64,000 nucleotides of DNA from Styela clava (lineage: Eukaryota). The stretch is from NCBI RefSeq assembly GCF_964204865.1, contig NC_135263.1:8494001-8558000 (forward strand), written 5' to 3'. Each line of letters opens with the position of its first letter. The stretch's first letter is position 1. Of this stretch, positions 22,798 through 54,392 are shown piece after piece. The notes below the pieces were generated by a model. The model had not been told where the DNA came from. It worked only from the letters and a program-made list of their open reading frames with translations, and made no database searches. The position numbers were made by a program, and so were the translations under genes.

Positions 22798-29878
<7,081 letters not shown>

Positions 29879-33704: not shown

Positions 33705-35627
33705 AACCTTGATATATTTCATATTAGAGTTTGAATTCTGTCACCATTGATGAGGTTTCAAGAGATTTACAATTAATACCGAAAATATATTTAGGAATGA
33801 CATAATGATGAGATTTTGTTAATGTATATATATATATATACAATGATGCGTGTACTATACAAGAAATGTTATGAGTATAATTTACATAATACGAAATGAC
33901 AATAATACGAAATGTCACTAATGTAGACTTATAAGACTTTCAAATATCGACATTGCTTTCCTGCATTTATCTTCTGTTTCAGCAATGAATAAAACGTGGT
34001 CGTTCGCGCCATGCATCTCTGCCACATAGACATCTACACACGAGGTTTTAGTCAGACGAATCGCATCGGCAAGTCGCTGACTTCCAATCACGCTCTTGTA
34101 CCGGTAGTGCTTCTTCAAATCATAAGTTTCTTGAGGTGTGTTATACTCAGCGTGGTTATAAAGCTTTTGAAATTCATCAATTGCAGAGTCTGGGTTAAAC
34201 TTGCGGTCAGGTGAAAGGCGATGTAGTCGAATGTTCAAACAATCACCAATTGTTTGAGTATCCAATCGCACACCGTTCGAAGCCCTGTATAATAATATGA
34301 ATAGAAAAAATGATGAAACAGTATTTTATTTGTATTCAATAATAGCCAGTTAGAGCTCAATAGATGCAACAAGGTTGTTTACTGCCAAATGGTGAAAACA
34401 GTTGGATAAAGCAAAAAGTACAAAGAAAAGAGTCTGGAGTTTTGATCTATGTTTGTCTTAATCACAAATGAAGATGAATATTTCGCAGTGGTCTCACTTA
34501 ATCTCCGAATCAAAACTTTGAATATTCTGTTGATACATTGTGCACAGATTCATTTGAAAATACAAATATATGGAAATATATGGATATTATACCATTGACG
34601 ATATTCTCACCAAATTCTGTCGAGTGTACTGCGTCGAGTAAGTTCAAGATATCCAAAAATATCTTTGTCGACAGAAATCATATTTTCATCATTCTTATCA
34701 GTGGGTCCGCCTGAATTAGCTAAATAAAATATGAAAAGATTAGGTACAAATCCACACAAATGACATAGATTTAGAAAAAGTTCCACCGTAGAAATATACG
34801 TCTATGTGACACGATATAGGAGAAACAGCGCCTCTGTGTGATGCCGAATTTCAGTTTGCACTTACCGGCATTTAATTTTATTAAATTTTTTATAACTGAA
34901 AAAAGTCCAATAAAATCGCATCTATCAACAATTTACACTAATTAGCTACCTTGATTTGGGCCATTCGTCATTTTTTCTCGATCCAGAAAGTGTTTGAACA
35001 TGTCCAACGCCATCCTGCATTTTTCGTGGTTCGGAGCAGTGAATATAATGTTGCATGGTGAATCATGCACTCGATCCATGTGTACTTGAGGAAACTCAGG
35101 ACGAAGACTAGCAAAAATTCTTTCCAGTGCTTCATTAGGTAAATTCGAATCGAATTTGGTCGTATCCTGAGCGACAGAATTTGAAACTTTTTCATAAAGA
35201 TCCTTCAAAGATTTTTCTGCTTTTTTAGGGTTTCCATCTGAAGTTGTAGGAGTGAGATTAATTTTGGACTTGTCGCCCATCACAGATTCGTTCATGTCAA
35301 CGTCGAATTTTTTCCTAAAAATATATGTATATAAATTGTGTAGGCAAATAAGACTCTACATTAACGAACATCTGTGTTTGTTAAATTGTGAAAACGTTAT
35401 TACTTTCTCAGTGATTATCATAGCTTACCTACCTGGTTTACTACTTTTGTTCAAAATCCATTAAAATTAGGAAAGGTTTTCGATGACCATAAGAATTGTA
35501 TTGAACAACCAACCAAATAGTATCAAGGAAATATATAATGTTTCTCACTTAATATCATCCAAATCCGAAGAATGAACAAGTTTCTTATATGCGAACATAT
35601 CCTTATCTATCACAGTTGATACAACTT
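33705..35627 (-). repeat. Segmental duplicate of 41284-43308 (3' half of the RRM-KH gene, including introns and 3'UTR)
   Basis: Collinear exons and recognisable introns (e.g. ATCATAGCTTACCTAC, ACTACTTTTGTTCAAAATCCATT, GAATTTCAGTTTGCACT, CTTGATATATTTCA); similarity stops abruptly at TACAACTT 35627 / 43308. Confidence 0.92.
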
Positions 35628-38600
35628 TAAAGAATTTTGCAAAAAAACACTAATATATTTAATCAATGAAGTGTATCTCACAGTAATAAAAATAAAACAG
35701 TGAATTTCAAAATTTATGGTCCCAATTTTGAGTCTTAGTAGCACAATGAATTTTCTGAAGATTTTGCGGACTTGACAAGGGTACATGAATATTTATGGTT
35801 TCTTACTTGATATTATTCAAGTCCCAAGAGTGCACGAGTTTCATATATGCAAACATATCATGATCTAGGACAGTCGATACGATTTCTTTATATACTGGCA
35901 GATTCGATGATGTCTGTGAAACAAGCATTGCACCTGGACAATAAGAAAATAAGATAAGATACAAATTTTAACGCATAATTCATCTGAAACCTTCTTGTTC
36001 AAAGCGGGCACGTCTACATTAACATTTATGCAAATTTTTGAATATGATATTTGGTTGTAGACAATACTATTGAAACACAAACAATCCGGATACGTCGTTG
36101 GCATGCATCGATCGTTATATAATCCTTTGCAATTTTTATTTTATTGGAACCTTGTTACAAAAAATGAGAAAAAGGATTGCAAGCAGCTAAAGCAACAATG
36201 AACTATGGCTTCAGCACTATTCTCACTAACCTGCACTTGTAGAACTGTTCTCAGGTTCAAATGAGTCCGAATCAGATGCTACAATGTTCATGCTGTCCAT
36301 TACAGACATACTTATGGCATGACAGCACTCAAGACACGTCTTGACGATTTTCTGAATAAATATAAATTGAAGAGGTTGTTATGGAATAATTGCGAATACG
36401 ATTAATATAATCATCTGGAATATAACCTTCAAGATAGCATGTTACATACTTTTATTTCAATAAATAAATATTTACTTATCGAATAGTGCTCAAACCTTTT
36501 TTTCAATCAAGAATCTCCTATAATTGAGAGGAACTTTCTGTAGATCCACATAATGATCCAATTTCTTCAGTACTTTTTTGCGATCAGATGCTTTGTGTTC
36601 TATCCATGTTATTAATGCCTTCAGCTTCATTTTTTCTGATGCCTTCGGTAAAAAAAATGTGAGTTATAACTGCATGCATGCATAATTAATTCATTTGACA
36701 AAACACGTGTTTCAAGATTTTGTTTAAAACCATTTTTTTTTACCAGTTTGACTCCTATTGCTTAGATTTTAGAATATTGATATGTTAGAACGAAATAAGA
36801 AAACTCGCGCTTTGGTTGGCCGTGGATATTGATGTTCCGAGTTTCATCTCAAATAGGCTCGAGTATGAAGCGCTATAAGGTTGTCTCAAAATAAATTTAT
36901 ACTTGTTTAGTTGTTTCTACAAAAAACTACCTTCATTATAGGAAAAAATTATTTTTATGTATTATTCCAGCGAATTTATGAGCATTACCATAAAAATAAG
37001 TAGCAAAAATGGTGTTTTTAAAACAGAGGGCTATTGACCAATGTTAATAAATTTGAAGCCAAGCTATAGCTGTTTTTTGTACATAACATACTTCCATTAT
37101 TTTTTTGCAATGTCTTCTTATTTACATAATTATACTGGTTGGTTAAAATAATGTAGCATGCTCAATACCTTATTGTCTTGGCATTTGATCATATCAATTA
37201 TATCCTTTTCTTCGATGAATTTGAACTCTTCCTTATTTGAAATTTTCTCAAAATTCTTCATTGCAAATATTTTCCCTTTTTCCTCCAATATTTTGCAACC
37301 ATAAAGATTCGCGATTTTCATCGTAACGAAATATGAGTTTTCATCAAGGTTTTCTTCGAGAGAATTTGTAATTCCATCGACAACTTCTAATAGTTATCGA
37401 TAAAAACAAGATATTTTTAATGTGTTATTGACTAATTGTCATATATAGGCCTATATTTTTTGCAATATATATTGTCGTTTTATTCTATTTGATTCAAGAG
37501 TCTTTCTGCGCGCTAACACAAATGTATTTCTGTAGCATTCCTTCTGACCTCGGTTACAGAAATACATTCGTGTTAGTGTGCAGCAACACTCTTGAATCAA
37601 ATAGAATAGTCATCCTCACTCTTGCTTCAACATCCTCACATTATACGGATACACTTGCACAAAGGCATAGAGCATGGAAATGTAGTAAGTTCCACGTAAC
37701 CCCAAATGATAGTTCTCGCTTTATGCTGTTAAATATGTTCCTTTTAACTTCGTATTATAGAATCATAAAATCGATATAAACAAATATCTGCGAAAACCAA
37801 GAGATAAACACACAAAGAAGAAGCACGTACTTCTTAGCTGTATGAATTGAGCCACATTCATCAAGGATTCGGCGTTCTCAATTGTTGTAGATAATTCACC
37901 GGTGTAGATATATTCTATACATTGTTTCAGGCATACTGGATCCACTCCTTTAATCTCCACTCTGCCGGATTGAGTTTCAACATTCTTCCAAACAACAGAT
38001 GAACAATCAAATTATCATTCTGTATTGTCGTACAATTAACATTCTCTAATCCTAATGCATATAATTCGAAACTTTTTTGGGGCTTTTTTTCAATATATTT
38101 AATGGATAACAATTACGGTGCCCAAAATATAAATTTTTGTTGTCGTAATTTCCACACTGTTCACCTATTAATCGCAGGTTTACGTAATTTGAATACAATA
38201 CAATCTTACGAGAAAACTTTGTTGCACATGAGCCGTGATCGATATATTGAGAAAATAAAAAATGCCAACAATAATAAACCCACATCATGAGAAAGCATAG
38301 CTTTGAAGTAATCAGATCCAGCCGATATGACATTCTTGTGCACCGGGATTTCTTCTGTACCAGCTATAATAGTGAAATCGCAATGCAGCTTCGATTCATT
38401 TCTGTATCTTATATTCAAAAAATTAAATCAAAGTCACGTTTTTCAATAATGGAAAGTTTGGCATAAACTAAGGAAACATATTTGGCCACACTAAAGAATG
38501 ACGGTATGCTCTGGAACAAAATAAAATCCATGGTCAAGTGGAAGAAATAACTTGCAAAATTGCTTTAACTTCTGGCAAAACTGAAGTCGAGAATCGCAAG

Positions 38601-38899
38601 AGAGCATATCACATTAGCATTGCCAACACCTCAAAAATCCAAGGTCATAAATCCTCAGAAAAGAATAAACAAAGTAAGTAAAATAAGAGAGGAATAAAGG
38701 GATAGTAAAAACACGTGAAATGAACGACAAGTTCGAGAAGTAGTTTGAAAGAATTTCCCGATGTTCATATAGACTAACAATTTTTGATAGCCGTTTCCTA
38801 ATTAAAAAAATTATATTTCAGTAATAAAACAAACCTGTTCAATTCCTCCAACATTTCTTTTGCATGATTATCATCATTTACACCGATTTTTACAGACAT
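33918..38899 (-). CDS. Chimeric BTB-BACK plus RBM43/DTX3L-type KH-like protein, about 596 aa, no Kelch repeats
   Basis: Exons 38899-38835, 38401-38284, 37984-37831, 37386-37169, 36642-36496, 36351-36231, 35933-35807, 35314-34950, 34719-34611, 34284-33918; all GT-AG and phase-compatible, 1791 nt with no internal stop. BTB: HAKEMLEELNRNESKLHCDFTIIAGTEEIPVHKNVISAGSDYFKAMLSH..IEYIYTGEL; BACK: FAMKNFEKI..SEKMKLKALITWIEHK..R; then KH-like modules, exon 8 about 86% identical in protein to the neighbouring gene. Confidence 0.8.
35549..35624 (-). other. Second copy of the chimera junction exon (candidate mutually exclusive exon or remnant)
   Basis: 76 nt, AAG acceptor / GTGAG donor, phase 1 to 2, encodes VSTVIDKDMFAYKKLVHSSDLDDIK; 2 nt different from the donor gene. 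Confidence 0.55.
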
Positions 38900-39969: not shown

Positions 39970-41508
39970 GCGCTAATAGATTCCTCCTCACTCAATATTT
40001 AGTTTTATTTTAGCGCGGATATTCCGACTGAAAAACTAGTTAACAATTTAGGCTAGCCAAGAATACTATTCAACTTCGCTGGTTGATTCATCTTTTCTTC
40101 TGTAGTTAGATAAGCTTCTCTCGGTTAAACGGACTTTGTTTGAGACGAGGTATTGTAAATTATGTATTATATATGACCAGCAACACACTACTCCACTCTT
40201 TGTACGCAAACCAAACATACGATTAGTCAAATATTAAATTTCAGATTGGTAACGTATAAATTGTACATATACATCGAGACGATTCGTACATTTATCATTG
40301 ATATTATATCATTACTTTACACTGTGCAATATACATAAATTACATTGGCAGGAACAGACAATGATGACAACGACTCCGGGTGTGGCATAATAAATGTATT
40401 CTGTACTTTAATTAGGCTTCGTGTAGGCCAATATGTACTGAGAATACTTGCATCGATCATGTTAATAGCAACAGGGGAGCAATGCTCCACATTATGGACA
40501 GCATGACACGCTCAACGCTCACTGTCAGTCCCCTTTTTTCTTCCTAATTCGCATTTCGAATGAAACTCAAACTAGGACTTCAAAGTGTTCGATCAAACCC
40601 TGATTCAGATATGTATTTCTGAAATGTTTTTTCCGCCATTCAACAAAAAATATGAGTATATATTACTGATATATTTATCAAAATATGAATCCATCTTTAA
40701 TTATGGTGTACGATGACTTCTACAATTAATCATTAACGAAGTCGTTATTGCCTAATAAAAGAATATTGGAAAACGCTACAAAATAGCGATAGTTGTTAAC
40801 GATAGCGATAGTATTTTAAATGGGATATTAGATCAGGCGGTATTTTGTTATCTTTATAAAGTGAAAAACGTATTGTTAACACAAATTGTTGAAGTATCTT
40901 ACCTATGAACCCCATTCATGTTATTGGCTCCGGGCTAAAACGAAATGTCGTACAGTGCTACACGAGCCGTTGTAATTAAGTAATATATGCGAAAAACTCC
41001 TTGCAGATATTTGAACAAAAATTGAATTATATGTAAATTCTCTCAGGACTTCGCAATTTCAAAATTCTATTCTTAGAACGTCATTCTCGTAAACGTAAGT
41101 TTGTGAAGAAACTTTTCTTCGCAAAAGTCTATTTGATAAAGCATATAGCACTGAGAGTGACTTTAAAAGGCTCCTTCAGCTTTACGATTGGTTCATACTT
41201 GGACTTCTTAACCTTGGGCTATTTTCTTTAGGACTATGTATCTTCTTACTCTTTAAACTACGGTACCCACGACAAGTAAATCTAATCTTGATATATTTCA
41301 GATATAAATTTGAATTTTTTCATTACTGAAAAAATAATCGATGGTTTTATAGATACAGGAATTCATTGGTTTAAGTGATTTACAATTAATTTCCAAAATA
41401 AATTTATGAAAGACTCATTAAATTTATGCCGATGAAGATACAATTATACGTATAGAATACAATGTTAGTGGTATAATTCACTTTGACAAATGACAATCAT
41501 ACAAAATG

Positions 41509-44500
41509 TCATTTATTTTGACTTAAAAGTCTTTCAAATGTCGACATTGCTCTTTTGTATTTATCTTTTGTTTCAGCAATGAATAAAACGTGGTCGTTTG
41601 AGCCATGCATCTCTGCCACGTAAACATCTGCACACGAGCTTTTAGTCAGACGTATCGCTTCGGTAAGTTGCCGACTCCCAATCACACTCTTGTAGCGCTC
41701 CTTCAAATCATAGGTGCCTTGAGGTGTTTTTTCCTGAGCGTAGTTATAAAGCTTCTGGAATTCATCAATTGCAGAATCTGGGTCAAACTTATGGTCAGCT
41801 GATAGACGATGTAGTCGTATGTTCAAACAATCACCAATTGTTTGAGTATCCAATCGCACACCGTTCGAGCCCCTGTATAATAATATGAGCTCAGCTAGAG
41901 CTATTCTAGATCTCAATACATACAACAAGGTTGCTTACTACTCAATGACGATTATAGTTGGATAAAGCAAAAAGCACATTAAATACGGAAAGTTTTAATA
42001 AAATTCGATCGATTGGCATCCATCGATATTTAAATTTGATCAAATTTTTGTTTTAGTCAGGCTCAATCACAATAGAACATGCATATTTCACATTGGTCTC
42101 ACATGGTCATGCAAATATAAGATTACGCTTAATCTCCGCATTAAAACTTTGAATAATCTGTTGATACGTTGTGTCTATGGAAAAACTTTACCATTAACGA
42201 TATTCTCACCAAATTCTATCGAGTGTACTGCGTCGAGTAAGTTCAAGATATCCAAAAATATCTGTGTCGACAGAAATCATATTTTTATCTTTCTCACCAG
42301 TGGGTCCACCTGAATTGCCTAAATAAAATATGAAAAGATTCAGTATAAACTATAAATTCACTGAAATTACATAGATTTAGAAAAAAATTTAGAATCGTAG
42401 AAATATACGAGTATGTAAATTGTAAAACATCACAGGAAAAATATCCCCCTTATGTGGTGTAGAATTTCAGTTTGCACTCACCCGGACTCAACTTTATTAA
42501 ATTATTTATAACTAAAAAAGTCCAATACATTCGTATATATGAGCAATATACACTAATTAGCTACCTTGATTCGGGTTATTCATCATTTTTTCTCGATCCA
42601 GAAAGTGTTTGAACATGTCCAACGCCATCCTGCATTTTTCTTGATTCGGGGCAGTGAATATGATGGTGCATGGTGAATCATGTACTCGATCCATGTGTAC
42701 TTGGGGAAACTCGGGACGAAGACTAGCGAAAATTCCTTCCAGTGCTTCTTTAGTTAAATTCGAATCGATTTTGGTTGTATCTTGAGCGACAGAATTTGAA
42801 ACTTTATCATGAAGAGCATTCAAAGATTTTTCCGCTTTTTTAGGGTTTCCATCTGAAGTTGTAGGAGTGAGAACAATTTTGGATGCGTCGCCCACCACAT
42901 TTTCGTTCATGCCAACGTCGAATTTCTTTCTAAAATTATATAAATATATATATATTGTGTTGGCATATAAGATTTATTTATTATGCCAAGAACACTAATT
43001 TATCCATAGATAAAGATATCTGAATTAAGGAGCATCTATGTTGTTAAATTGTGGCCTTGGCAAACATTATTAATTTTAACTTTTCAGTTATTGATCATAG
43101 CTTACCTACATGGTTACTACTTTTGTTCAAAATCCATTTATTTTAAAGTAACAAACGTTTTCGATGGCCATAAAAATTGTACTGGACAACCAACCAAATA
43201 GTATCAAGGAAATAAATACGGTTTCTCACTTGATATCATCCAAATCCGAAGAATGAACAAGTTTCATATATGCGAACATATCCTTATCTATCACAGTTGA
43301 TACAACTTCCTGGGTTTTGATTGGTTGATGTGGTTGTTGTTGTTGTGGAGTAGGCATTACTACTGGCTGGAGCGGAATGCTGGGGACCTCGTGAAACACA
43401 TTTCTTGACAAATAACCACTTTCTGGAGCCATTTTAGGTCCCATATTATCCAGATTTTGTGATATCATATTTTCAATTCTTTCAAAAACGGCTTGCATTT
43501 GATACCATTCACCTGAAAATGCAATATACTTGAAATACTGATTGTTTAGGTCAATACATCCAAAACTGGAACAAAACATGAATTTCAAGAATTCCCCAGA
43601 TTAGAGAAAACAAAAATGAAAGTCGTTCGTTATTTGTTTTAATGACACTCTGCTTTACATATTACCACGTCCTATATTAATAGCATTATTTTATGAAGTC
43701 ATGCTTATCTGCTTAACATTCATACTCAACCAATTTTATAGAAGCAGTACCTTCAGCATTATACCCTTGTCCACTGCCCACGGGAGTGATATTGCACCCA
43801 GTGGAATCCATGATACTTTCAAGTTCATCTTCGACATCGCCAGATTTGATTTTTAACTGTTGAATGACGTAGTCGGATATTTTCGCGGTGACAGTCTCGA
43901 ATATTCGTGGCTGCCAAAATGATGAATATAACGAATGGACCTCAAATATATTATAACCCCCAGTTGTTAACGGACAAAACTCTTAGATTTTATTATTGAG
44001 AAAATTGACATGAAATCTACACTAACCAAGGTTGCGACTATGGGACCATTATGAATGAGGTCTGAATATGACTAACAAGTAAAAATACACGCAGAAATTT
44101 AAAATACTTACTTACGCCTTTATTAAATTTTGATATCGAATCAATCAATCGAATCGTTTTTTTATTAGCCATGCGGGAAAAGCACAATAAAATGAAAAGC
44201 AAGAGAAATCCCGGAATATAGGTATATGTATATATAATCTTGACTTGGCCCAGAATGGACACGATAACATCGAAATGACTTCGGTTTATTTGTCAGCGGC
44301 TATCTTGCAATAACTGTTATAATGAATAAAACAATACAAAGTTACCACAACGCAAACGCTTTTATGTTGACAGTTATGCTATCCTATTTTGTAATTATAA
44401 TTCTATTTTATTTATATACGATTCCAACCCGCAGTTATAGTTATAACATAATAGTGTGTGTTATTAAAGAACACGAGGTACCTACAACATTGGTTTCAGC

Positions 44501-45332
44501 GGGGGCAAACATCAATATTCATTTCACCGGACGTGTCTAGATGCTTCACTTAGGTTTAAAACAAACAAACCCATATAATCGTGCTCAATGCTCACCATCG
44601 TTTGATTACTTACCCGCGGTTGCAGAGGGCTTACAGAAACTGTCTTCCCCGCTATTTTGTGTGTGTGTTGAAGAACGGACGGAACAGCTGAAAATCGAAA
44701 ATATTTGTAATATAGTTATCAGCTCTAGCCATTAGCAAAGTATGATAATACATTCATTTTCAATAGGTAATCACGTTGATACTTTTTGTAATCGCTAGCC
44801 AATCACGTATGCGAGTGACGCTTTGTTTGCCCATCGTACATAATGGCGAAACACAGTCAATATTTCGCGATTACGTGACGACTGAAGCGAAGCCATGTCC
44901 ATACTGTATTACAAAATGAAACACGTAGCAAATTGGTCGATTATGAAGCCTTTCCTTCCGTAACAAAATAACTTTGCTGACGAATATCTACGTTTCCGTG
45001 AATTTAGGCCTGACATAAAATGACGTCATAGTTTTGCCAGTCGCTATCTGTTAATTATTTGTTCGCGGCGGTGTTTGGCGCTCAGAGTTGGTCTGGCATA
45101 CGATGTGAAACTACCGTTATCTGTACTTACTTTCTTGCTCTTCAAAGGTGATTATTGCAGTATCACTCTCTTGGTTTGATAAGGGAAAAGTCACTGATTG
45201 AACGTCACCCCCGCCGACATTTTTCTTTTTCTGGAAGTAGATCGTAAGTTTGTCCGAACTAACGTTCGATGGAATGCCTTTAACGACTATTTTATTCGAG
45301 GTAATATCTTGGCTTGGCGTCGAACTAGCCAT
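41509..45332 (-). CDS. RBM43-like / DTX3L-N-terminus-like RRM plus KH-like protein, about 518 aa
   Basis: Exons 45332-45131, 44687-44614, 43910-43751, 43512-43230, 42929-42565, 42318-42210, 41872-41509 (1557 nt, in frame). RRM KIVVKGIP..KLTIYFQKKKNVGGGDVQSVTFP..AIITFEE of the PARP14/RBM43/DTX3L type; RIFETVTAKI, EGEW and two [IV]DxD[MI]FxY motifs resemble RBM43 as I recall it (KIFSSVNAIL, EGSF, LDTDVFLY). Confidence 0.8.
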
Positions 45333-46315: not shown

Positions 46316-49300
46316 TTAGTCTGACTCGCTGCCACTTTCTCCACCTTCAGATTCATGAACGTTCATCTCTAATTTGTATTCTTGATCACACCCCATGAAA
46401 GCATCACTCATGAAGTACAAGGTGTAAGAATGAGTGCCGGCTGATGGTGGGATAAAATCTAGTTTGACCTGAACACACAAAAAGAACCATTAATGTTAAA
46501 ACTCTCGCCCGTAAACGACTTTGAATTCCTTCAAACAACCACCAATAAGGAGAGCAGAAAAAAATGTCTTTCAAGCCCAGTTGTGTCTATAGATATAGGA
46601 ATTGTTGGGACTTTCAGGTCAGAGAATTCTTTTTAGATCCCATGTCATGGTAAATATCTCAACCAAATCTTATACACCAAATCAAACCTTTTAAAATGTT
46701 AGAAAAATAACAGAAAAAATCCCACTGAGCAAGGTGTACATACATGTGCTTATAAACGAGTGGAATCATTTACCATTTTTGTTTTGTTGAATGTAGTATT
46801 AAAAGAAAATATATAGACCATACCTTCGCCTTTTGCTGCAGAGTTAGCCGTTTGATGGAAATAAGGCTGTTGGTCTTGGGATCTCCAACAACCACCCACC
46901 ATCCTTCCTCACGTTTTTGAGGGAAGAAAGGTGCAATTACTGGTCCAGATACTTCATCTTCTCTTTCCAAAGTAACAACCACAACAACTGGATGACCTCT
47001 GAAGAAATTAGTAAAAGTTAATAGAGTCAAAATTTGATAATGATTGTACAATTGCAATCATACAATTACAAAGCACTGTTTCGTTTATAATTATAAAACA
47101 ATGTTGTTATAGGCTCAAATGCACATTCTAGCTGACAACCTTAGAAAATTATTGGCTACTTATTTTTTGGGAATATTACAAGGGCCATATAAGCTTGGCA
47201 CAATTTGGGCCAGAAAATACTGAGTACTTCCAGCATATCTAATAACAAAATGTGATAAGTAGATGACATTTGAATAGATAGATTTGTTTTGTCAAAAAAA
47301 ATAATGATAAATGAACCTACGCTCTTAAATTATCGTCGTCCAATACATCATAAGTCAGTTCAATATTTGGGTATCTATTGCAAAATCTTGCAACATCGGC
47401 CATCTGTGGTTCCGTCATTCCCAATAAGGAATTTCTGTCATCATCTTCCATCTCTAATATGTCGAAAACACTTTCAATGTCCTGATAAAAAAATCATTTT
47501 TAGAATATTAATTAGAATTGACTGTTTCAAAAAATGTACCCATAACATCAAACAGTTATAGCTGTTAAGTGTTATGAACTGCTACATAAATAAGACAATT
47601 CGAATTATACTCTAACACCAACCTTTTCTGTGCATCTTCTGATAACATTTGGATCAAAGTGTGGTAACTGCTTCAAATAAGAATCCTTGCTCCACATTGC
47701 TTGTGTCACCATTTGTGCAAGTTCCATGGCAGCTAGTGCAGGTGACAACCAACCATTTGATGATAAAACATCAACACAGGCTTGAATCAAACGAACAGAT
47801 TTGCTCAATATACCCTCAGTGTCAGATTGAAGTTCAGCGGGAAGTTGAAGCCGAGACAAATGTGCCTAAAAGAGAAAGATGAAATTAAACGTTTGACAAT
47901 GTATTTGTGTAAATGTGAAGTTAAAATAAGTTAATGACAGCTTTTATCAAAAATTATGAATAATAATATGAATTCAGTGCCCTATTATTACTCAGTATAG
48001 AAAATGTTTATAGAGTTATCAATCAGACCTGCAGAAGCAAGTTAGTCTTGATATGTGGATCGGTGAATCTAACATTCTGTGGTTTGTATGGAACTTTATC
48101 CAGAAGTTGTTTGAGAGTTCCATCTTCTCGATGGCGTATTTGTATTGCTTCATATTCTGCCGCATTGCTGATAATTTCTATCAATCCACGAATCTTGGTT
48201 TTGGCATTCAAAGACATACTGAACAGCTCTATAGTGGTGTAGTTGATATAGTAGTAAGCAGAAATCATAGCCAGATTCAGAGGTGAAACATCCATGTCAT
48301 CTTCTATCGCAATACACTTAGACTGCTCCAAGTCAGAAAGTGTGTTTTCAACAAGCTCTGACAAGCTGTCAGAAAGATGACGATGTGAAACTCCCTGGAA
48401 AATAATAAAATATTGGGTGATTGAATGAGTGATTTCTACTTCATAATATGCCCATGTAGTTGTTTATTGCTTGATTTGAAAATGTTTTTTCTACCATAAT
48501 ACAGCAAAACAACAATATGGTTTGAAATTTAAAAAAGTTCTAAGAGATACATTTTGTGTGCATAAGATTATGATTTATTTAATATTAGCTCATTTAACAA
48601 GACCTGTAGATAGCAATATTGAAGAATATATTTCAGCCACTCCATACTAAATATTAGTGTAAGGCTGTGCTTATTTGTTGCAACTAACTTTTGCAACCTG
48701 AAAAGCAATATTAGAAAGCACACATTGTGAGTCATGCTTCACAATAAAAATAATACTCAACTGTCGTCGAGTACCCCTGGAAATCTACCAATAAACCCTT
48801 GGCGACTCATAATCACCGGTTTAAAATATCTAATATATAAAACCTGCATGCATCATCATATCTCACCTGCAAATTATAATAATTTGGATTCTGAGTCATC
48901 CTACGATACAAGAAAGTCCATGTCATGTAATCAACTGCATCCTGTTTGTTTTCTATTGTTTTGGTGACAATTTCAGCATTGAAGTGATCATGTAAGCAAT
49001 GATCAAGATGAGATTCTACAGGCAGGGGTTCGTAGACAAATTTCTTGAAAAAATCTTTTTTCGAGCCTTGACACATGATCACACATTTTCCTTCTTCATC
49101 CTTGAGAGGTCGATTTGCTCTTCCGATCATCTGAAGTACATCGGTAACAGGATAGTCAACATAAGCATGAATTTTTCCATTGTAGTATTGGGTGTCCATC
49201 ACAATTACTAAGTGAGCAGATACAGTCAATGCCCAACACAAGCTACGTGATGCTACAAGTATTTGAACAGCTCCTGATGAAAATAACTGATCAACGACTT

Positions 49301-52300
49301 TTCTTTCCATCTCTGTTGTGCCATCGTGTAAATAAGCTACACCATTCGACAGTGTCTCCTTTAATGTATCATCATTCACATGTTCCAAGTATGGAGCCAG
49401 ATCTTCTTCTTTGCAATGGAGGAACTTTTGGGGTTGTCCATCAGCTGCGGCAAATGTTAACATGTCAACAGCACTAAGTTTCGATTGCTTACGAGAAGTA
49501 ACAAATATGATGACAGATCGTTTCGGGGAATGTTTAACAACTGCATTGTACACTGGTTTTGACATACTTAGCAATCTTGACTGAGCATGACTAATGTTGA
49601 AGCCTTGAATATGGATTTCCAAAGGAACTGGTCGGACATTCGGATGGAAGTTAAAAGTGTGAGTGGCACTGCAACCCAACCACTGAGCAACATCCTTTGC
49701 GTTTGCAAGAGAAGATCCGAGAGCTACAATCCTGATTTGTCGCTCAAGTTGAGAAGAGACATATCGCATTCTTGAGCAAACAACTTCTAATTCAGGTCCT
49801 GCTTCACCTCCAATCAGATGAATCTCATCGACAATGAATAACGAGACATTTTGCACATTTTTCCTTTGCTTCCATCTTCTAGAAAGAACATCCCATTTCT
49901 CTGGAGTAGACACTACAATATTTCCTTTGGCAATGAGCTTAAGATCAGTGCTTGTTTCACCAGTTAGTAGGACAACACGTTTGCCAAGATGAATTTCAAA
50001 TTTTTCTCTCCAATCTTGATAAACAATTTCAGCAAGAGCATCCATTGGAGTGACATAAACACATCTGGCTTCAGGATTAACTGCCAATGCATGCATGAGT
50101 GCAAATTCAGCACAAACAGTTTTCCCACTACCGGTTGGAGCTCCAATAAAGATGTTATCATCACTATTATACAAAGCATTGAAAACTTGTGTCTGAATAG
50201 GGTTAAAGCATGGAAACTTATCTTCAAAAAGTGCTTCAAATTCTGGGTTTCTGAGAGCAGATACGGGCAAAGGTTGGAGGTCAAGTAACTCTGTTGGTGG
50301 AGGGTATTTCTCAGGAAGAATGAGATGACGGAAAGATACCGGGAGTTGTGTTTCTGATGATAACCACCTATCTGACACAATTCGAATGAAATATTGTGGT
50401 GGAAGTGGTTCAAATACAGGCACAAAGAAGTTGACAATATGTTCATCCGTAGAATACTTGTTTTTGAGCAGAAAATATTCATGGTGGAGAATTATTTCGC
50501 TGTCGACATCTTCCACAAATATCCAAAATGCTTCTGAAGACCTGTGAGTGTTTTCATTCCATTGAAAATCCGGAGTGATAGTGAGTTCCACTCGAAGAGT
50601 TGATCTGGTAATTGGTTGGATGTGAACAGACAATTCCATCTTTGGAAATTGATGTATAAGTTTGTGAAGAACTCTCCCCATTTTTGGCATCCTGATGAGC
50701 TCTCCAATTTCATTATGATTCAAGTCATAGAAACGTTCCCAGGGAAAGTTTTTTTTTTCAATTTTTTTAACCACCTCATCTGGTACTTTCTTGAATTGAC
50801 GCAATGGACTCATTGACTGCCACATTCTACTTTGTATCATTTTGCACAATGATAGACATTTATCAGTAAGTTGGGCCCAACCTCTATAAAGCACAATTTC
50901 AAAAATAGCTCTCATCAGTCGACCAGCAGACTGTGTTACGTAGACCATATCAGCCATCAATGCAAACCCTTCCAATTTGAGCTGTGAGATGTAAGTTTGC
51001 AATAAAACATTAATTTTGGCAGTCGGCTCATCTATTCCTTCTTTGACTGGAATAGGCACTCGTTCCAAAAGCTTTTGCAGTTCCAATTTTTCTTCTTCAC
51101 GAACTGCTATGTATTTGAACTCAGAAGAAAGTGAAAAAACTCGAAACAATTCAATCTCACTCAGAGTAGGTTTCAGTAGTTGGTTGTATGTTGCCATGCT
51201 CTCATGGGTGCAGTAATAATGACTAGCAATCCGGCCCAAATCTGTCACTTGCAAGTGCCCAGTTTTTCTATCATATTTGACTAAATTGCTTTTATCTAAT
51301 ATGTTTGCAGCAGAATGAATCAAGTCAACACGATGTTGTTGTAAAAGAGGATCAGCCTTTAGTGCATCATGACTTATGGAGTATAAAGTAGGCTGTCGAA
51401 GCATTCTAATGTACAGGTAACTGTACCCAAGCCAGTTCACAGCATCTCTGACATTCTGAACATTACCCAGCACAATTTCAGCATTCAGCATATCTGGCAG
51501 TTTGGCAACCATTTGACTTTCTACAGGCAATTGTTGATTCAAAAGCGACAAGTAATATTGCAATTCACTATGGGATGTAATAAGAACACCTTCACCCTTG
51601 GTGTCATATTGTGGCCTACCAGCTCGTCCCATCATCTGAAGTACATCAAGTGCACCCAATTCAACCCATCTACCTTTTTCTGGACTGTACACTTGTGTGC
51701 CTTTGATGATGACAGTATGAGCAGGTAAGTTGACACCCCAAGCAAGTGTGGCTGTTGAAACAAGTACCTGAATATGACGATCAGCAAATAAATCTTCAAC
51801 CAATGTTCTGTCAACTCTTGACATTCCAGCATGATGGATTGCGAAACCGTATGGCAGAAGATCTTTCAATTCTAAATTCTTTACTTGCTCAGATTCTGTT
51901 CGTAAAACTTCTGTGGAAGCGGATCCTTCTCTCAAAAAATGTCCTAGAGTGTCATTTTCCAAGCACATATCTCTAACAGCACGAGCAGTTTTTCCAGTTT
52001 CTTTTCGTGAATGAACAAAAATCAGAACTTGATTTTTACCTGCATTTTCAACAACTTTTTCATAAACAATTTCATTCATAACCTGAAACCTCTTGATTGC
52101 TTTCTTTTCTGTTATGCCAATGTATTGCTGTTCTAAAGGACATGGTCTAAAACTGTTGTCAAAGAAGAACAACCCTTTGGAGGGATCAACACGCAAGAAT
52201 GTGGCAACATCTTCATAATTTGGTAAAGTAGCAGAAAGTCCAACAAGTCTGACATCCTCTTGAGTTGTTTCGATGGATCTAATTGTCCTTGCAACAACAG

Positions 52301-54203
52301 ACTCCAGGACAGGACCACGATCATCATGAAGCATGTGGATCTCGTCAATAATCAACAGACGTACCAGCTGTGTGTATGTTCGTTCACCACCTTTTCTTGT
52401 CACAATATCCCATTTTTCCGGTGTGCAGACAATAATTTGTGTGGCATTGATTTCTTCTTTGCAAAGCTGATGATCACCTGTCATTTCACTGACTTTGATG
52501 CCATAAGCGGCAAGCCGTTTTCCGAAATTTCCAACCATTTCTTGTACCAGTGATCTCATTGGAGCGATGTATATTATTTTAAAATCATTAACATTAATCG
52601 TTCCATCAGAATTGATGTGCTTGCCAATTTCTCTCAACATAGTCAAGAGTGCAACATTTGTTTTTCCAGCACCAGTGGGGGCACACAGCAAAATATTCTC
52701 ATCACTTTCTAGTGTAGTCTTGGAAAGTCTACTCTGAATCCTGTTCAAACTTTTAAACCCTTCAAAAGCCGCTTGGGCATACTTGGGTAAAGTATCAATT
52801 GGAACAAGTTTTTCATCATCAGCAAAAACTTTTGGTTTTAAAGCAGGTACATGCACTTCTTCGTAACCTTTACGTTGTTTGCGATAAGAACCATCTGGTA
52901 ACTGGCATTTTTTATTTGCCATCAAGTGAGATCCTTGTTCAAACATGATATCTTCAAGATCAACCCCTTTGCTTGGCTGTAAAGTTTCATCTGTCTGGTC
53001 AGTTTCCATTGCTTCTAGATCAGCATCAACTTTGCTTCTGCGTAATCTTTCTCTGCGTTCTTGTTCTTCTTTAATGATATCTTCTTTCTCAGTTTCGTTC
53101 AGTTGCTGGAGAATCACTGACAATTCTTGATCGTTCTTCATTCTATCTTCAATTTGTTTTTTTGCAGCTTCACTTTGTGCACTCGCAAGTAAAGTGCAAT
53201 ATAGAATCATTTGTCGATGTTCACGCAAAATTTTGATAAAATCAAACTGATTGAAACCGAGCAACATTACCAATTGATTTTCACATTGTAAATCATCAAC
53301 CGCAGTCTTTAAAATTTCCAAGACTTCTTCTGCCTTTTTTTGCGAAACGATTGCATCATCATAAACTTTGCTCAAATTTCTTTGCAGCCAATAAGCATCA
53401 ACATCGCGAGGATGTAGTCCACGATTCTTAATGATATTGACATTTCCGGCTTCGTTGGTAAGATTAGCAGAAACAACCATATTCGCATCTGCCTCTACGC
53501 CACCTTCTTCATCATCATCTTCATTTTCAGATTCCTCCTGAACTTCACCATACCTGTTTTCTTGGTCTTCTTCTTCATCATCCGATTCAAACTGGACGTT
53601 GACACCATATGTTTCATCAATGTTATCATCTGCGGTTTCAGCATCCTTATCTGTGCCGAAGTCGGTAATCTTTTTGCCCAAATTTACCAAAACATGATAG
53701 CGAGTATCTTCTTGAACTCCCAACAGTGATTGAACTTCTTTTCGTCTTTCCTTATCACGCAGTTTATCATTCTTAAGAACAATTATCACTTCGTCAGCTG
53801 CGCCACAAAGAATGTCTCTTGGTTGGTCACCCAATGCAGCCTGGATAAAGCTGAGTAAAATCTCGTACGTTTCTCTAGTTTCTTTTGTTTTTGGTTTATA
53901 TAATATATTAACCATCTCATCCATTCCCTCAGATAACAGAGTTGCTCCTTTCAATTTCACAGAAGATTTTTGATCCTCGTCACGCTTGTATCGCTTTGCT
54001 CGACGCTCTTCCATCTGTGGTGGTCTTGTACGCTGCGCTCTATCACCCATTTTTGATCCAGTTAATTTTCCCTGCAATGAGATGACTTCTCCTGTCGGCT
54101 CATCTCTTGGTCGTCTATCAATGAGTGATCTGTCTGCTTGCAATACAAGATTAGAATTGGCTTTGTATTCATATTGCAGTGAACGGGCGGAGGCATCCGC
54201 CAT
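46316..54203 (-). CDS. SNRNP200: U5 snRNP 200-kDa helicase (Brr2), 2144 aa
   Basis: Exons 54203-48867, 48394-48029, 47865-47623, 47481-47321, 46998-46824, 46468-46316 (6435 nt); N-terminus [21 protein letters not shown]; two Ski2-like cassettes ([12 protein letters not shown] and [12 protein letters not shown]); Sec63 C-terminus [13 protein letters not shown]; AATAAA at 46036-46041 (-). Confidence 0.98.
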
Positions 54204-54392
54204 GCTGTTTTTTTATTGACAGCGATTCCTCTACAGATTTAATATATCTGTGGTAAAACATAAATAATAACATGTGAAAACGGTTGATGCAGTTTTTCTA
54301 AACAAATTCAACTAGCAAAGCATATTGTATGTATTGCCCCACTCATAACCTCCGTCTAATAGTAATTTATGTGATTCTGCACAACAGTCTTA

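What the first reader, a model, noticed from the sequence alone, without database searches (positions are those of the whole stretch)
33918..38899. Chimeric gene: Kelch-like BTB-BACK adaptor with KH-like modules from the neighbouring gene in place of the propeller
Seen: ten GT-AG exons join in frame (phases 2,0,1,0,0,1,2,1,2; 1791 nt, no stop). Exons 1-6 encode a KLHL-type BTB, a BACK domain and the post-BACK helix (KIVKTCLECCHAI), then a Ser/acidic linker. Where Kelch repeats should start, exons 7-10 encode the four KH-like domains of the adjacent RRM-KH gene. I found no Kelch repeat, and no stop between the halves. Known: BTB-BACK proteins dimerise and bind Cullin-3, while their C-terminal domain selects the substrate; DTX3L couples RRM/KH domains to a RING-DTC E3 ligase. 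Inference: this is a lineage-specific Cul3 substrate adaptor aimed at RNA, RNPs or KH-domain partners, convergent with DTX3L. I do not know of a described BTB-BACK-KH architecture.
Basis: partly seen in the sequence, partly recalled or inferred. Interest (0 to 1): 0.9.

Follow-up and report, generated by a model that had tools for sequence, protein, structure and literature searches.

The report
Sea-squirt BTB-BACK gene fused to KH-like exons
In the sea squirt Styela clava, the front half of a Kelch-like ubiquitin-ligase adaptor gene sits directly upstream of a copied tail of its RNA-binding-type neighbour and can be read as one open 10-exon gene, but the public annotation cuts it in two and I could get no RNA reads to settle which is right.

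Summary
The total is 1,794 nt plus a stop, 598 aa, not 1,791 nt/596 aa. Exons 1-6 encode BTB and BACK, and no Kelch exon follows. Exons 7-10 are copies of the 3' exons of the adjacent 518-aa RRM-KH gene (45332-41509) and fold as four type-I KH-like modules without GXXG loops. The genome is Styela clava.

RefSeq has two genes here:
- XP_077976187.1 (320 aa) is exons 1-7, then a stop read out of the exon-7 donor. The BTB-BACK to KH-exon junction is therefore in a public model.
- XP_077975921.1 (273 aa) is exons 8-10.

The exon 7 to exon 8 junction is in no model I could find. That cut runs through the middle of one KH-like domain. Exons 8-10 show coding constraint (omega 0.41, no frameshifts despite indel-rich introns).

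I put about 50% on the full chimera being made, about 33% on two separate products, and the rest on decay or artefact. The Cul3-adaptor function is inferred only. The scan noted this same stretch before (s1-825973, s1-826034).

The parts
38835..38899 (-). Exon 1. ATG at 38899, first ATG after an in-frame stop.
   Evidence: Identical to residues 1-21 of RefSeq XP_077976187.1.
38284..38407 (-). Exon 2, first half of the BTB domain.
   Evidence: Pfam BTB 1.2e-9. 75% aa identity to the KLHL paralogue at C18:1.08 Mb.
37831..37984 (-). Exon 3, second half of the BTB domain.
   Evidence: Pfam BTB 1.1e-5. RefSeq carries one extra Lys at this junction that a GT-AG intron cannot give.
37169..37386 (-). 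Exon 4, 3-box region and first half of BACK.
   Evidence: Pfam BACK 5.2e-6. 80 matches in the genome, the best being KLHL-type genes.
36496..36642 (-). Exon 5, second half of BACK.
   Evidence: Pfam BACK 6e-3. 55-61% identity to the paralogues.
36231..36351 (-). Exon 6, post-BACK helix plus Ser/acidic linker. This is the last exon of KLHL origin. Donor GCAG|GTTAGT.
   Evidence: 52-55% identity to the exon that precedes the Kelch exons in the paralogues.
35807..35933 (-). Exon 7, an old copy of the parent's junction exon. It encodes the beta1-alpha1-alpha2 part of KH-like module 1. Its first 47 nt have no detectable parent.
   Evidence: 79% nt identity to the parent, dS about 1.1, omega about 0.12. 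Joined to exon 6 in RefSeq XP_077976187.1.
35549..35624 (-). Exon 7', a young second copy of the junction exon inside intron 7. It has an AG acceptor, a GT donor and the same phases as exon 7. It could be an alternative, mutually exclusive exon or a skipped relic.
   Evidence: 96% nt identity to the parent. The 581-aa ORF through it is open.
34950..35314 (-). Exon 8, the rest of KH-like module 1 plus all of module 2.
   Evidence: 86% aa identity to parent exon 42929-42565. Only two copies in the genome. Residues 40-116 of the model match vigilin KH4 at Z 9.3.
34611..34719 (-). Exon 9, linker plus beta1-alpha1-alpha2 of KH-like module 3.
   Evidence: 86% aa identity to the parent. Strand 129-133 and helices 134-143 and 145-154 in the AF2 model.
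33918..34284 (-). Exon 10, the rest of module 3, module 4 and the stop codon.
   Evidence: 78-80% aa identity to the parent. Equals the C-terminus of RefSeq XP_077975921.1.
33754..35627 (-). Young duplicated block, including introns and about 165 nt (164 by coordinates) of 3' flank, homologous to parent 43308-41368.
   Evidence: blastn. Exons 87-96% and introns 77-86% identical. 16 intron indels against no exon frameshift.
41509..45332 (-). Parent gene: seven exons, 518 aa, PARP14-type RRM plus KH-like modules. Source of exons 7-10.
   Evidence: Open model. RRM_PARP14_3 5e-11. The Ciona homologue carries RRM_PARP14_3 and KH_DTX3L above cut-off.

Best explanation
What it is. This is a lineage-specific chimeric gene of Styela clava, built from two partial duplications. 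Exons 1-6 are the 5' half (BTB, BACK, post-BACK helix) of a multi-exon Kelch-like gene. Exons 7-10 are a tandem partial copy of the 3' end of the adjacent PARP14/DTX3L-like RRM-KH gene.

Most likely product. The primary transcript is cis-spliced through all ten exons, using exon 7 or alternatively exon 7'. The result is a 598-aa (or 581-aa) protein in which four KH-like modules stand where the Kelch propeller should be. On this reading the RefSeq two-gene split at intron 7 reflects an incompletely spliced or alternatively processed transcript.

Inferred mechanism (not shown). The BTB-BACK half dimerises and docks on Cullin-3, as in KLHL3. The GXXG-less KH-like modules act as protein-protein interaction modules, as in DTX3L/PARP9/PARP14. 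They would bring the parent protein or its partners, or less likely RNA, to the ligase.
For: Shown:
- The ORF is open over ten canonical exons.
- BTB and BACK are present. The best solved relative is KLHL3 BTB-BACK, 4HXI, E 1.3e-25 over residues 12-246.
- The closest paralogues share the intron positions and continue into Kelch exons.
- Exons 7-10 derive from the neighbour.
- The exon 6 to exon 7 junction is in RefSeq XP_077976187.1.
- The exon 8-9 and 9-10 junctions are in XP_077975921.1.
- The RefSeq cut falls inside one domain. In the AF2 model (pLDDT 80) the exon-9 segment forms beta1-alpha1-alpha2 of module 3. Its homologue, exon 7, is missing from the 273-aa protein, whose first 22 residues are left without predicted secondary structure, the first 10 below pLDDT 50.
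- Exons 8-10 are under coding constraint: omega 0.41 (CI 0.26-0.66), and no frameshift in 838 nt against 16 indels in 722 nt of aligned intron. Derived changes are balanced between the copy and the parent.
- Exon 7 kept the KH pattern over dS of about 1.1, with omega about 0.12.
- The exon-7 donor (CAA|GTAAGA) and the exon-8 acceptor are intact, and the parent keeps its own exon-8 acceptor too.
- KH-like fold: Foldseek finds PCBP2 and FMRP KH1-KH2; VIA finds vigilin KH4 at Z 9.3. The Ciona homologue passes Pfam KH_DTX3L.
Against: - RefSeq annotates two genes and no joined isoform. No 598-aa or 581-aa protein turned up in three protein searches. These blanks are weak, because the intact 518-aa parent was not found either.
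- The extra Lys in the RefSeq protein needs a non-GT-AG acceptor. That hints the RefSeq model rests on transcripts. If so, those transcripts apparently did not splice exon 7 to exon 8.
- The pairwise omega cannot fully exclude a neutral copy beside a strongly constrained parent.
- Exon 7 statistics rest on 27 codons.
- The Cul3 contact residues were not verified.
Confidence: 0.5

Rival explanations
1. Two separate products, as in RefSeq. The first is a Kelch-less BTB-BACK protein of about 320 aa with a 42-aa KH-derived tail, ending at the stop read out of the exon-7 donor. It might act as a Cul3 or KLHL-dimer decoy. The second is a 273-aa N-terminally truncated KH-like protein from exons 8-10. 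That one may be made from the same primary transcript by polyadenylation in intron 7 plus spliced-leader trans-splicing at the exon-8 acceptor. Operon-like processing of this kind is known in ascidians (my own knowledge, not tested here).
For: - XP_077976187.1 and XP_077975921.1 are separate genes.
- The 273-aa protein starts at the first Met after the exon-8 acceptor.
- An ATTAAA lies in intron 7 (sequence).
- No joined protein was found.
Against: - Both products would carry halves of one KH-like module.
- Long conservation of exon 7 as a mere tail is hard to explain.
- The splice signals for exon 7 to exon 8 are intact and phase-matched.
- The region upstream of exon 8 is homologous to an ordinary intron of the parent.
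Confidence: 0.33
2. Non-functional debris: a truncated KLHL duplicate next to a partial duplicate of the neighbour. The frames stay open only because the copies are young, and the transcripts are noise.
For: - Both halves are partial copies.
- The genome holds very many KLHL-like copies, some of them fragmentary.
- The copy-versus-parent omega of 0.41 is an average over two lineages.
Against: - Six KLHL-derived exons at only 50-75% identity to their closest paralogues keep an open frame and all splice sites.
- No frameshift in exons 8-10, where about six would be expected under neutrality in the copy (P about 0.002).
- Derived amino-acid changes are not skewed to the copy.
- Exon 7 has omega about 0.12 at dS about 1.1.
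Confidence: 0.1
3. Assembly artefact: a mis-join or collapsed/duplicated haplotig creates the apparent juxtaposition.
For: Tandem paralogues are error-prone to assemble. I could lay no reads on the region.
Against: - The window has no N and lies in a 20-Mb chromosome-scale contig.
- The two copies differ by 4-28% with many indels, far more than I would expect between haplotypes. No haplotype comparison was made here.
- The copy has a different 5' structure from the parent.
- The junction exon is spliced to exon 6 in a public model.
Confidence: 0.03

Closest known systems
KLHL-type BTB-BACK-Kelch Cul3 substrate adaptors (e.g. KLHL3; Styela paralogues annotated kelch-like 3/12/28)
   Same: BTB and BACK domains and a post-BACK helix. 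Same intron positions as the multi-exon Styela paralogues. 4HXI (KLHL3 BTB-BACK) is the best solved match.
   Different: No Kelch propeller. The substrate-binding position is occupied by KH-like modules of foreign origin (or, in the RefSeq model, by a 42-aa tail).
DTX3L / PARP14 / PARP9 / RBM43-type RRM plus KH-like proteins
   Same: The parent gene has a PARP14-type RRM (5e-11). Its Ciona homologue passes Pfam KH_DTX3L. The modules are type-I KH-like without GXXG. The KH-like domains of this group mediate protein-protein contacts (PMC11080071).
   Different: No RING-DTC, macro or PARP catalytic domain in either the parent or the chimera. Any link to ubiquitination would come through BTB-BACK/Cul3, not a RING in the same chain.
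MEX-3 family (KH domains plus RING E3)
   Same: KH-type modules combined with ubiquitin-ligase machinery. MEX-3C KH1 is among the structural matches.
   Different: MEX-3 has canonical RNA-binding KH domains with GXXG and its own RING. There is no BTB-BACK and no common origin.
Young chimeric genes made by partial duplication and exon shuffling (jingwei-type)
   Same: Both parental genes are identifiable. A new junction was created between partial copies. The copied part shows constraint.
   Different: Here the donor of the 3' half is the immediate neighbour. The junction exon exists in an old and a young copy. Transcription of the full fusion is unproven.

Membership tests
KLHL (BTB-BACK-Kelch) family | BTB/POZ domain | tested here: met
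   PF00651 3.2e-21 on the 320-aa public protein. Also found in exons 2 and 3 separately.
KLHL (BTB-BACK-Kelch) family | BACK domain after BTB | tested here: met
   PF07707 1.1e-11. KLHL3 BTB-BACK aligns over residues 12-246.
KLHL (BTB-BACK-Kelch) family | C-terminal Kelch beta-propeller | tested here: not met
   No Kelch hit in any exon or in downstream ORFs. The paralogues have Kelch exons directly after the exon-6 equivalent.
Cul3 substrate adaptor (functional class) | Cul3-contacting residues (phi-x-E loop, 3-box) and actual Cul3 binding | not tested
   Only overall homology to a Cul3-bound BTB-BACK (4HXI) was seen. The loop aligns with a one-residue gap, and I did not verify the motif.
DTX3L/PARP14-type KH-like domain (Pfam PF21718) | Profile match above the curated cut-off | tested here: inconclusive
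   Exon 8 alone scores E 0.11, 12.7 bits, against a cut-off of 27.4. The 273-aa protein has no hit. The Ciona homologue (25-37% identical in aligned stretches) passes at 30.2-30.6 bits.
DTX3L/PARP14-type KH-like domain (Pfam PF21718) | Type-I KH topology (beta-alpha-alpha-beta-beta-alpha) | tested here: met
   The AF2 model (pLDDT 80) shows this order of elements for modules 2, 3 and 4. Structural matches: PCBP2/FMRP KH1-KH2 and vigilin KH4 at Z 9.3.
Canonical nucleic-acid-binding KH | GXXG loop between helix 1 and helix 2 | tested here: not met
   The helix 1 to helix 2 linkers in the model are 1-3 residues without G-x-x-G (sequence of the 273-aa protein against the secondary structure).
DELTEX E3 ligases (DTX3L) | RING plus DTC domains | tested here: not met
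   No such Pfam hit in parent exons, chimera exons or the Ciona homologue.
Expressed chimeric gene | Transcript joining parts of both parental origins in one frame | tested here: inconclusive
   Exon 6 to exon 7 is joined in RefSeq XP_077976187.1. Exon 7 to exon 8 is in no model found.

The most novel reading that the evidence does not exclude
The full 598-aa BTB-BACK-4xKH-like protein is made and works as a Cul3 adaptor whose 'substrate receptor' is a copy of its neighbour's own interaction modules. Through KH-like homotypic contacts it would recruit the parent RRM-KH protein or the parent's partners for ubiquitination. That would be a self-derived degrader or regulator of a PARP14/DTX3L-like pathway in a tunicate. 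The copied modules would stay matched to the parent through gene conversion (identity falls from 96% to 72% along the block).
Probability: 0.2. Interest if true: 0.65.

Novelty: new variant of a known kind. Interest (0 to 1): 0.42.

Why it matters
If the ten exons are spliced together, this is a BTB-BACK protein with KH-like modules in place of the Kelch propeller. I found no description of that architecture in the paper library or in the protein searches. Its birth can be read almost step by step from one chromosome. It would show how Cul3 adaptors gain new receptors by borrowing a neighbour's interaction domains. It would also link a PARP14/DTX3L-like module set to a different ligase class.

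If the RefSeq split is right, the locus is still a clean example of how a partial duplication leaves two half-domain genes. It is also a warning for annotation in tandem-duplicated regions. Either way it is confined, so far, to one ascidian and has no functional data.

Tried and rejected
It was assembled only inside local scripts to check frame and to compare with the public proteins.
- Complex prediction on the exon-7 tail against the exon-8 head gave no verdict. It is no evidence either way.
- A six-frame search of the genome with PF21718 found nothing, and the controls rang nowhere, so it is uninformative.
- Searches that could have shown a 598-aa or 581-aa protein were blank: representatives with exon 8, the 273-aa protein and a mixed alignment. 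The parent's 518-aa protein was not found either, so these blanks weigh little.
- I looked for remnants of an older exon 8-10 set downstream of 33754 and found nothing convincing.
- PDB sequence searches with the KH modules found nothing; only the RRM matched the N-myc-interactor NID domain.
- The apparent extension of exon-7 homology upstream of the young breakpoint is too weak to use.
Full report
**What is in the sequence.** The window is Styela clava chromosome-scale contig C18, 8,494,001-8,558,000. The organism is named by the sources of the matching public proteins. Gene order on the minus strand is as follows:
- topoisomerase I (about 62000-58400);
- SNRNP200/Brr2 (54212 to about 46319);
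- a seven-exon RRM-KH gene (45332-41509; 518 aa, open frame);
- the finding.

A convergent plus-strand tektin gene (about 22800-29875) lies downstream.

**The exon model.** The joined frame has a single, terminal stop. The joined model was built only inside local scripts.

**The 5' half.**
- Pfam finds BTB in exons 2-3 and BACK in exons 4-5. On the public 320-aa protein the values are BTB 3e-21 and BACK 1e-11.
- The best solved relative is the KLHL3 BTB-BACK construct 4HXI, E 1.3e-25 over residues 12-246.
- The genome holds at least 80 matches to exon 4, many in tandem arrays of intronless BTB-BACK-Kelch genes.
- The closest relatives are multi-exon genes at C18:1.07-1.11 Mb. They share the exon boundaries of exons 2-6 (75, 73, 50, 61 and 52% aa identity) and then continue into Kelch-repeat exons.
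- In the finding, intron 6 is only 297 nt. Nothing Kelch-like lies anywhere before the tektin gene.

The 5' half is therefore a partial copy of a KLHL gene that has lost its propeller.

**The 3' half.**
- Exons 7-10 are copies of the last exons of the neighbouring gene, at 74, 86, 86 and 78% aa identity.
- These exons occur nowhere else in the genome.
- At DNA level one block, 35627-33754, matches parent 43308-41368, including introns and about 165 nt of 3' flank.
- The left edge of the block lies inside a parental exon.
- Identity falls along the block: 96% (exon 7'), 86% (intron), 90% (exon 8), 81% (intron), 92% (exon 9), 77% (intron), 87% (exon 10), 72% (3' flank).
- Exon 7 itself (35933-35807) is a separate and much older copy of the same junction exon: 79% nt identity, dS about 1.1. 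It has few amino-acid changes (omega about 0.12-0.14 over 27 codons).
- The young copy, exon 7' (35624-35549), sits unused or alternatively used in intron 7. It has an AG acceptor, a GT donor and the same phases, and the ORF through it (581 aa) is open.

**What the modules are.**
- The parent's first exon is a PARP14-type RRM (PF23085, 5e-11).
- Only four protein clusters in 1.8 billion representatives match exon 8.
- One of them is Ciona intestinalis LOC100186427. It carries RRM_PARP14_3 (2e-10) and passes Pfam KH_DTX3L (30.2 bits, cut-off 27.4) on the unit homologous to exons 9-10.
- The window's own exons do not reach that cut-off (E 0.11).
- AlphaFold2 on the public 273-aa protein, which equals exons 8-10, gives mean pLDDT 80. 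Modules 2, 3 and 4 each show the beta-alpha-alpha-beta-beta-alpha order of elements; module 1 has only its C-terminal helix there.
- Foldseek ranks tandem KH structures first (PCBP2, FMRP, IMP3, Krr1).
- VIA-align gives vigilin KH4 at Z 9.3, rmsd 2.6 A, 74 residues aligned.
- The nearest named ESM-Atlas clusters are all KH families. This is a lead only.
- The helix 1 to helix 2 linkers have no GXXG.

With exon 7 supplying beta1-alpha1-alpha2 of the first module, the count of four KH-like modules is right. 'KH-like' is the accurate word.

**Public models.** RefSeq cuts the locus in two.
- XP_077976187.1 ('kelch-like protein 12', 320 aa) is exons 1-7 followed by Lys and a stop read straight out of the exon-7 donor (AA|GTAA). 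It differs from my model only by one extra Lys at the exon 2/3 junction. That Lys would need an acceptor ending in GG. The paralogues lack this residue.
- XP_077975921.1 ('uncharacterized LOC144431950', 273 aa) starts at the first Met of exon 8 and runs through exons 9 and 10.

Junction 35807->35314 is not.

**Is the fusion real?**

In favour:
- The RefSeq cut splits one KH-like module. The 320-aa protein ends with an orphan beta-alpha-alpha. The first 22 residues of the 273-aa protein have no predicted secondary structure and the first 10 fall below pLDDT 50.
- The exon-7 donor and the exon-8 acceptor are intact and phase-matched.
- Exon 7 has kept the KH pattern over a long time.
- Exons 8-10 are constrained. 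Omega is 0.41 (bootstrap CI 0.26-0.66, binomial P 1.5e-4).
- There are no frameshifts in 838 nt of exon, while 722 nt of aligned intron carry 16 indels. P is about 0.002 if the copy were neutral.
- Against two outgroup fragments, derived changes in exon 8 are not skewed to the copy.

Against:
- No joined isoform was found, though the intact parent protein was not found either.
- The non-canonical Lys suggests that the RefSeq model rests on transcripts. If so, those transcripts evidently did not carry exon 7 spliced to exon 8.
- A complex prediction of the exon-7 tail with the exon-8 head gave no verdict.

**Verdict on mechanism.** My estimates are:
- about 50% that the full BTB-BACK-4xKH-like protein is produced;
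- about 33% that two products are made, which is plausible in an ascidian through polyadenylation plus spliced-leader trans-splicing at the exon-8 acceptor (my own knowledge, untested);
- about 10% that the locus is decaying;
- about 3% that it is an assembly artefact.

Function is inferred only. The BTB-BACK half would dimerise and bind Cul3, by homology with KLHL3. The GXXG-less modules would more likely bind proteins than RNA, because the KH-like domains of DTX3L, PARP9 and PARP14 mediate their mutual and homodimeric contacts (PMC11080071). I did not test that idea.

**History (inference).** Two scenarios are possible.
- An old fusion used exon 7, and its downstream exons were later overwritten or kept similar to the parent by gene conversion. 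This fits the identity gradient.
- Alternatively, a later second partial duplication landed behind exon 7.

No relic of an older exon 8-10 set was found.

**Novelty.** A BTB-BACK protein with KH-like modules was not found in the paper library or in the protein searches. I rate it a new variant of a known kind, of moderate interest until a transcript proves it.

Noticed in passing
window 35549-35624 (-), inside intron 7: A second, young copy of the junction exon, 96% identical to the parent. It has its own AG acceptor and GT donor and the same phases as exon 7. It could be a mutually exclusive alternative exon (581-aa ORF) or a skipped relic.
   Followed up: partly
window 33754-35627 versus 41368-43308: Identity between the copy and the parent falls steadily from 5' to 3' (96% down to 72%) in exons and introns alike. 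This suggests gene-conversion tracts of different ages rather than one duplication date.
   Followed up: partly
window 37985-37987 / 38284 (exon 2/3 junction): RefSeq XP_077976187.1 has one extra Lys (AAG) that requires an intron ending in GG. The GT-AG junction gives the same length as all paralogues. A polymorphic TAG|AAG tandem acceptor in the RNA donor animal is one possible cause.
   Followed up: partly
window 37481-37608 (intron 3): A hairpin with 54-nt arms, 91% complementary, and a 20-nt loop. It belongs to a dispersed palindromic (MITE-like) family with at least 89 scored matches out of 1,290 candidates in the genome.
   Followed up: partly
G000:C1:23.02-23.30 Mb; also C18:3.12-3.15 Mb, C13:20.87-21.14 Mb, C17:0.93-1.26 Mb, C10:2.68-2.76 Mb, C6:18.6-18.7 Mb: Large tandem arrays of BTB-BACK(-Kelch) genes. 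Many are intronless with ORFs of about 550-570 aa. This is a marked lineage-specific expansion of Kelch-like genes in Styela clava.
   Followed up: no
window 41509-45332 (-): The parent RRM-KH gene has an open seven-exon, 518-aa model. No matching protein appeared in any protein search, although the two halves of the chimeric locus did. It may be annotated differently or not at all.
   Followed up: partly
window 46319-54212 (-): The SNRNP200/Brr2 gene has unusually long uninterrupted coding stretches, with ORF pieces of 737 and 1,061 aa.
   Followed up: no
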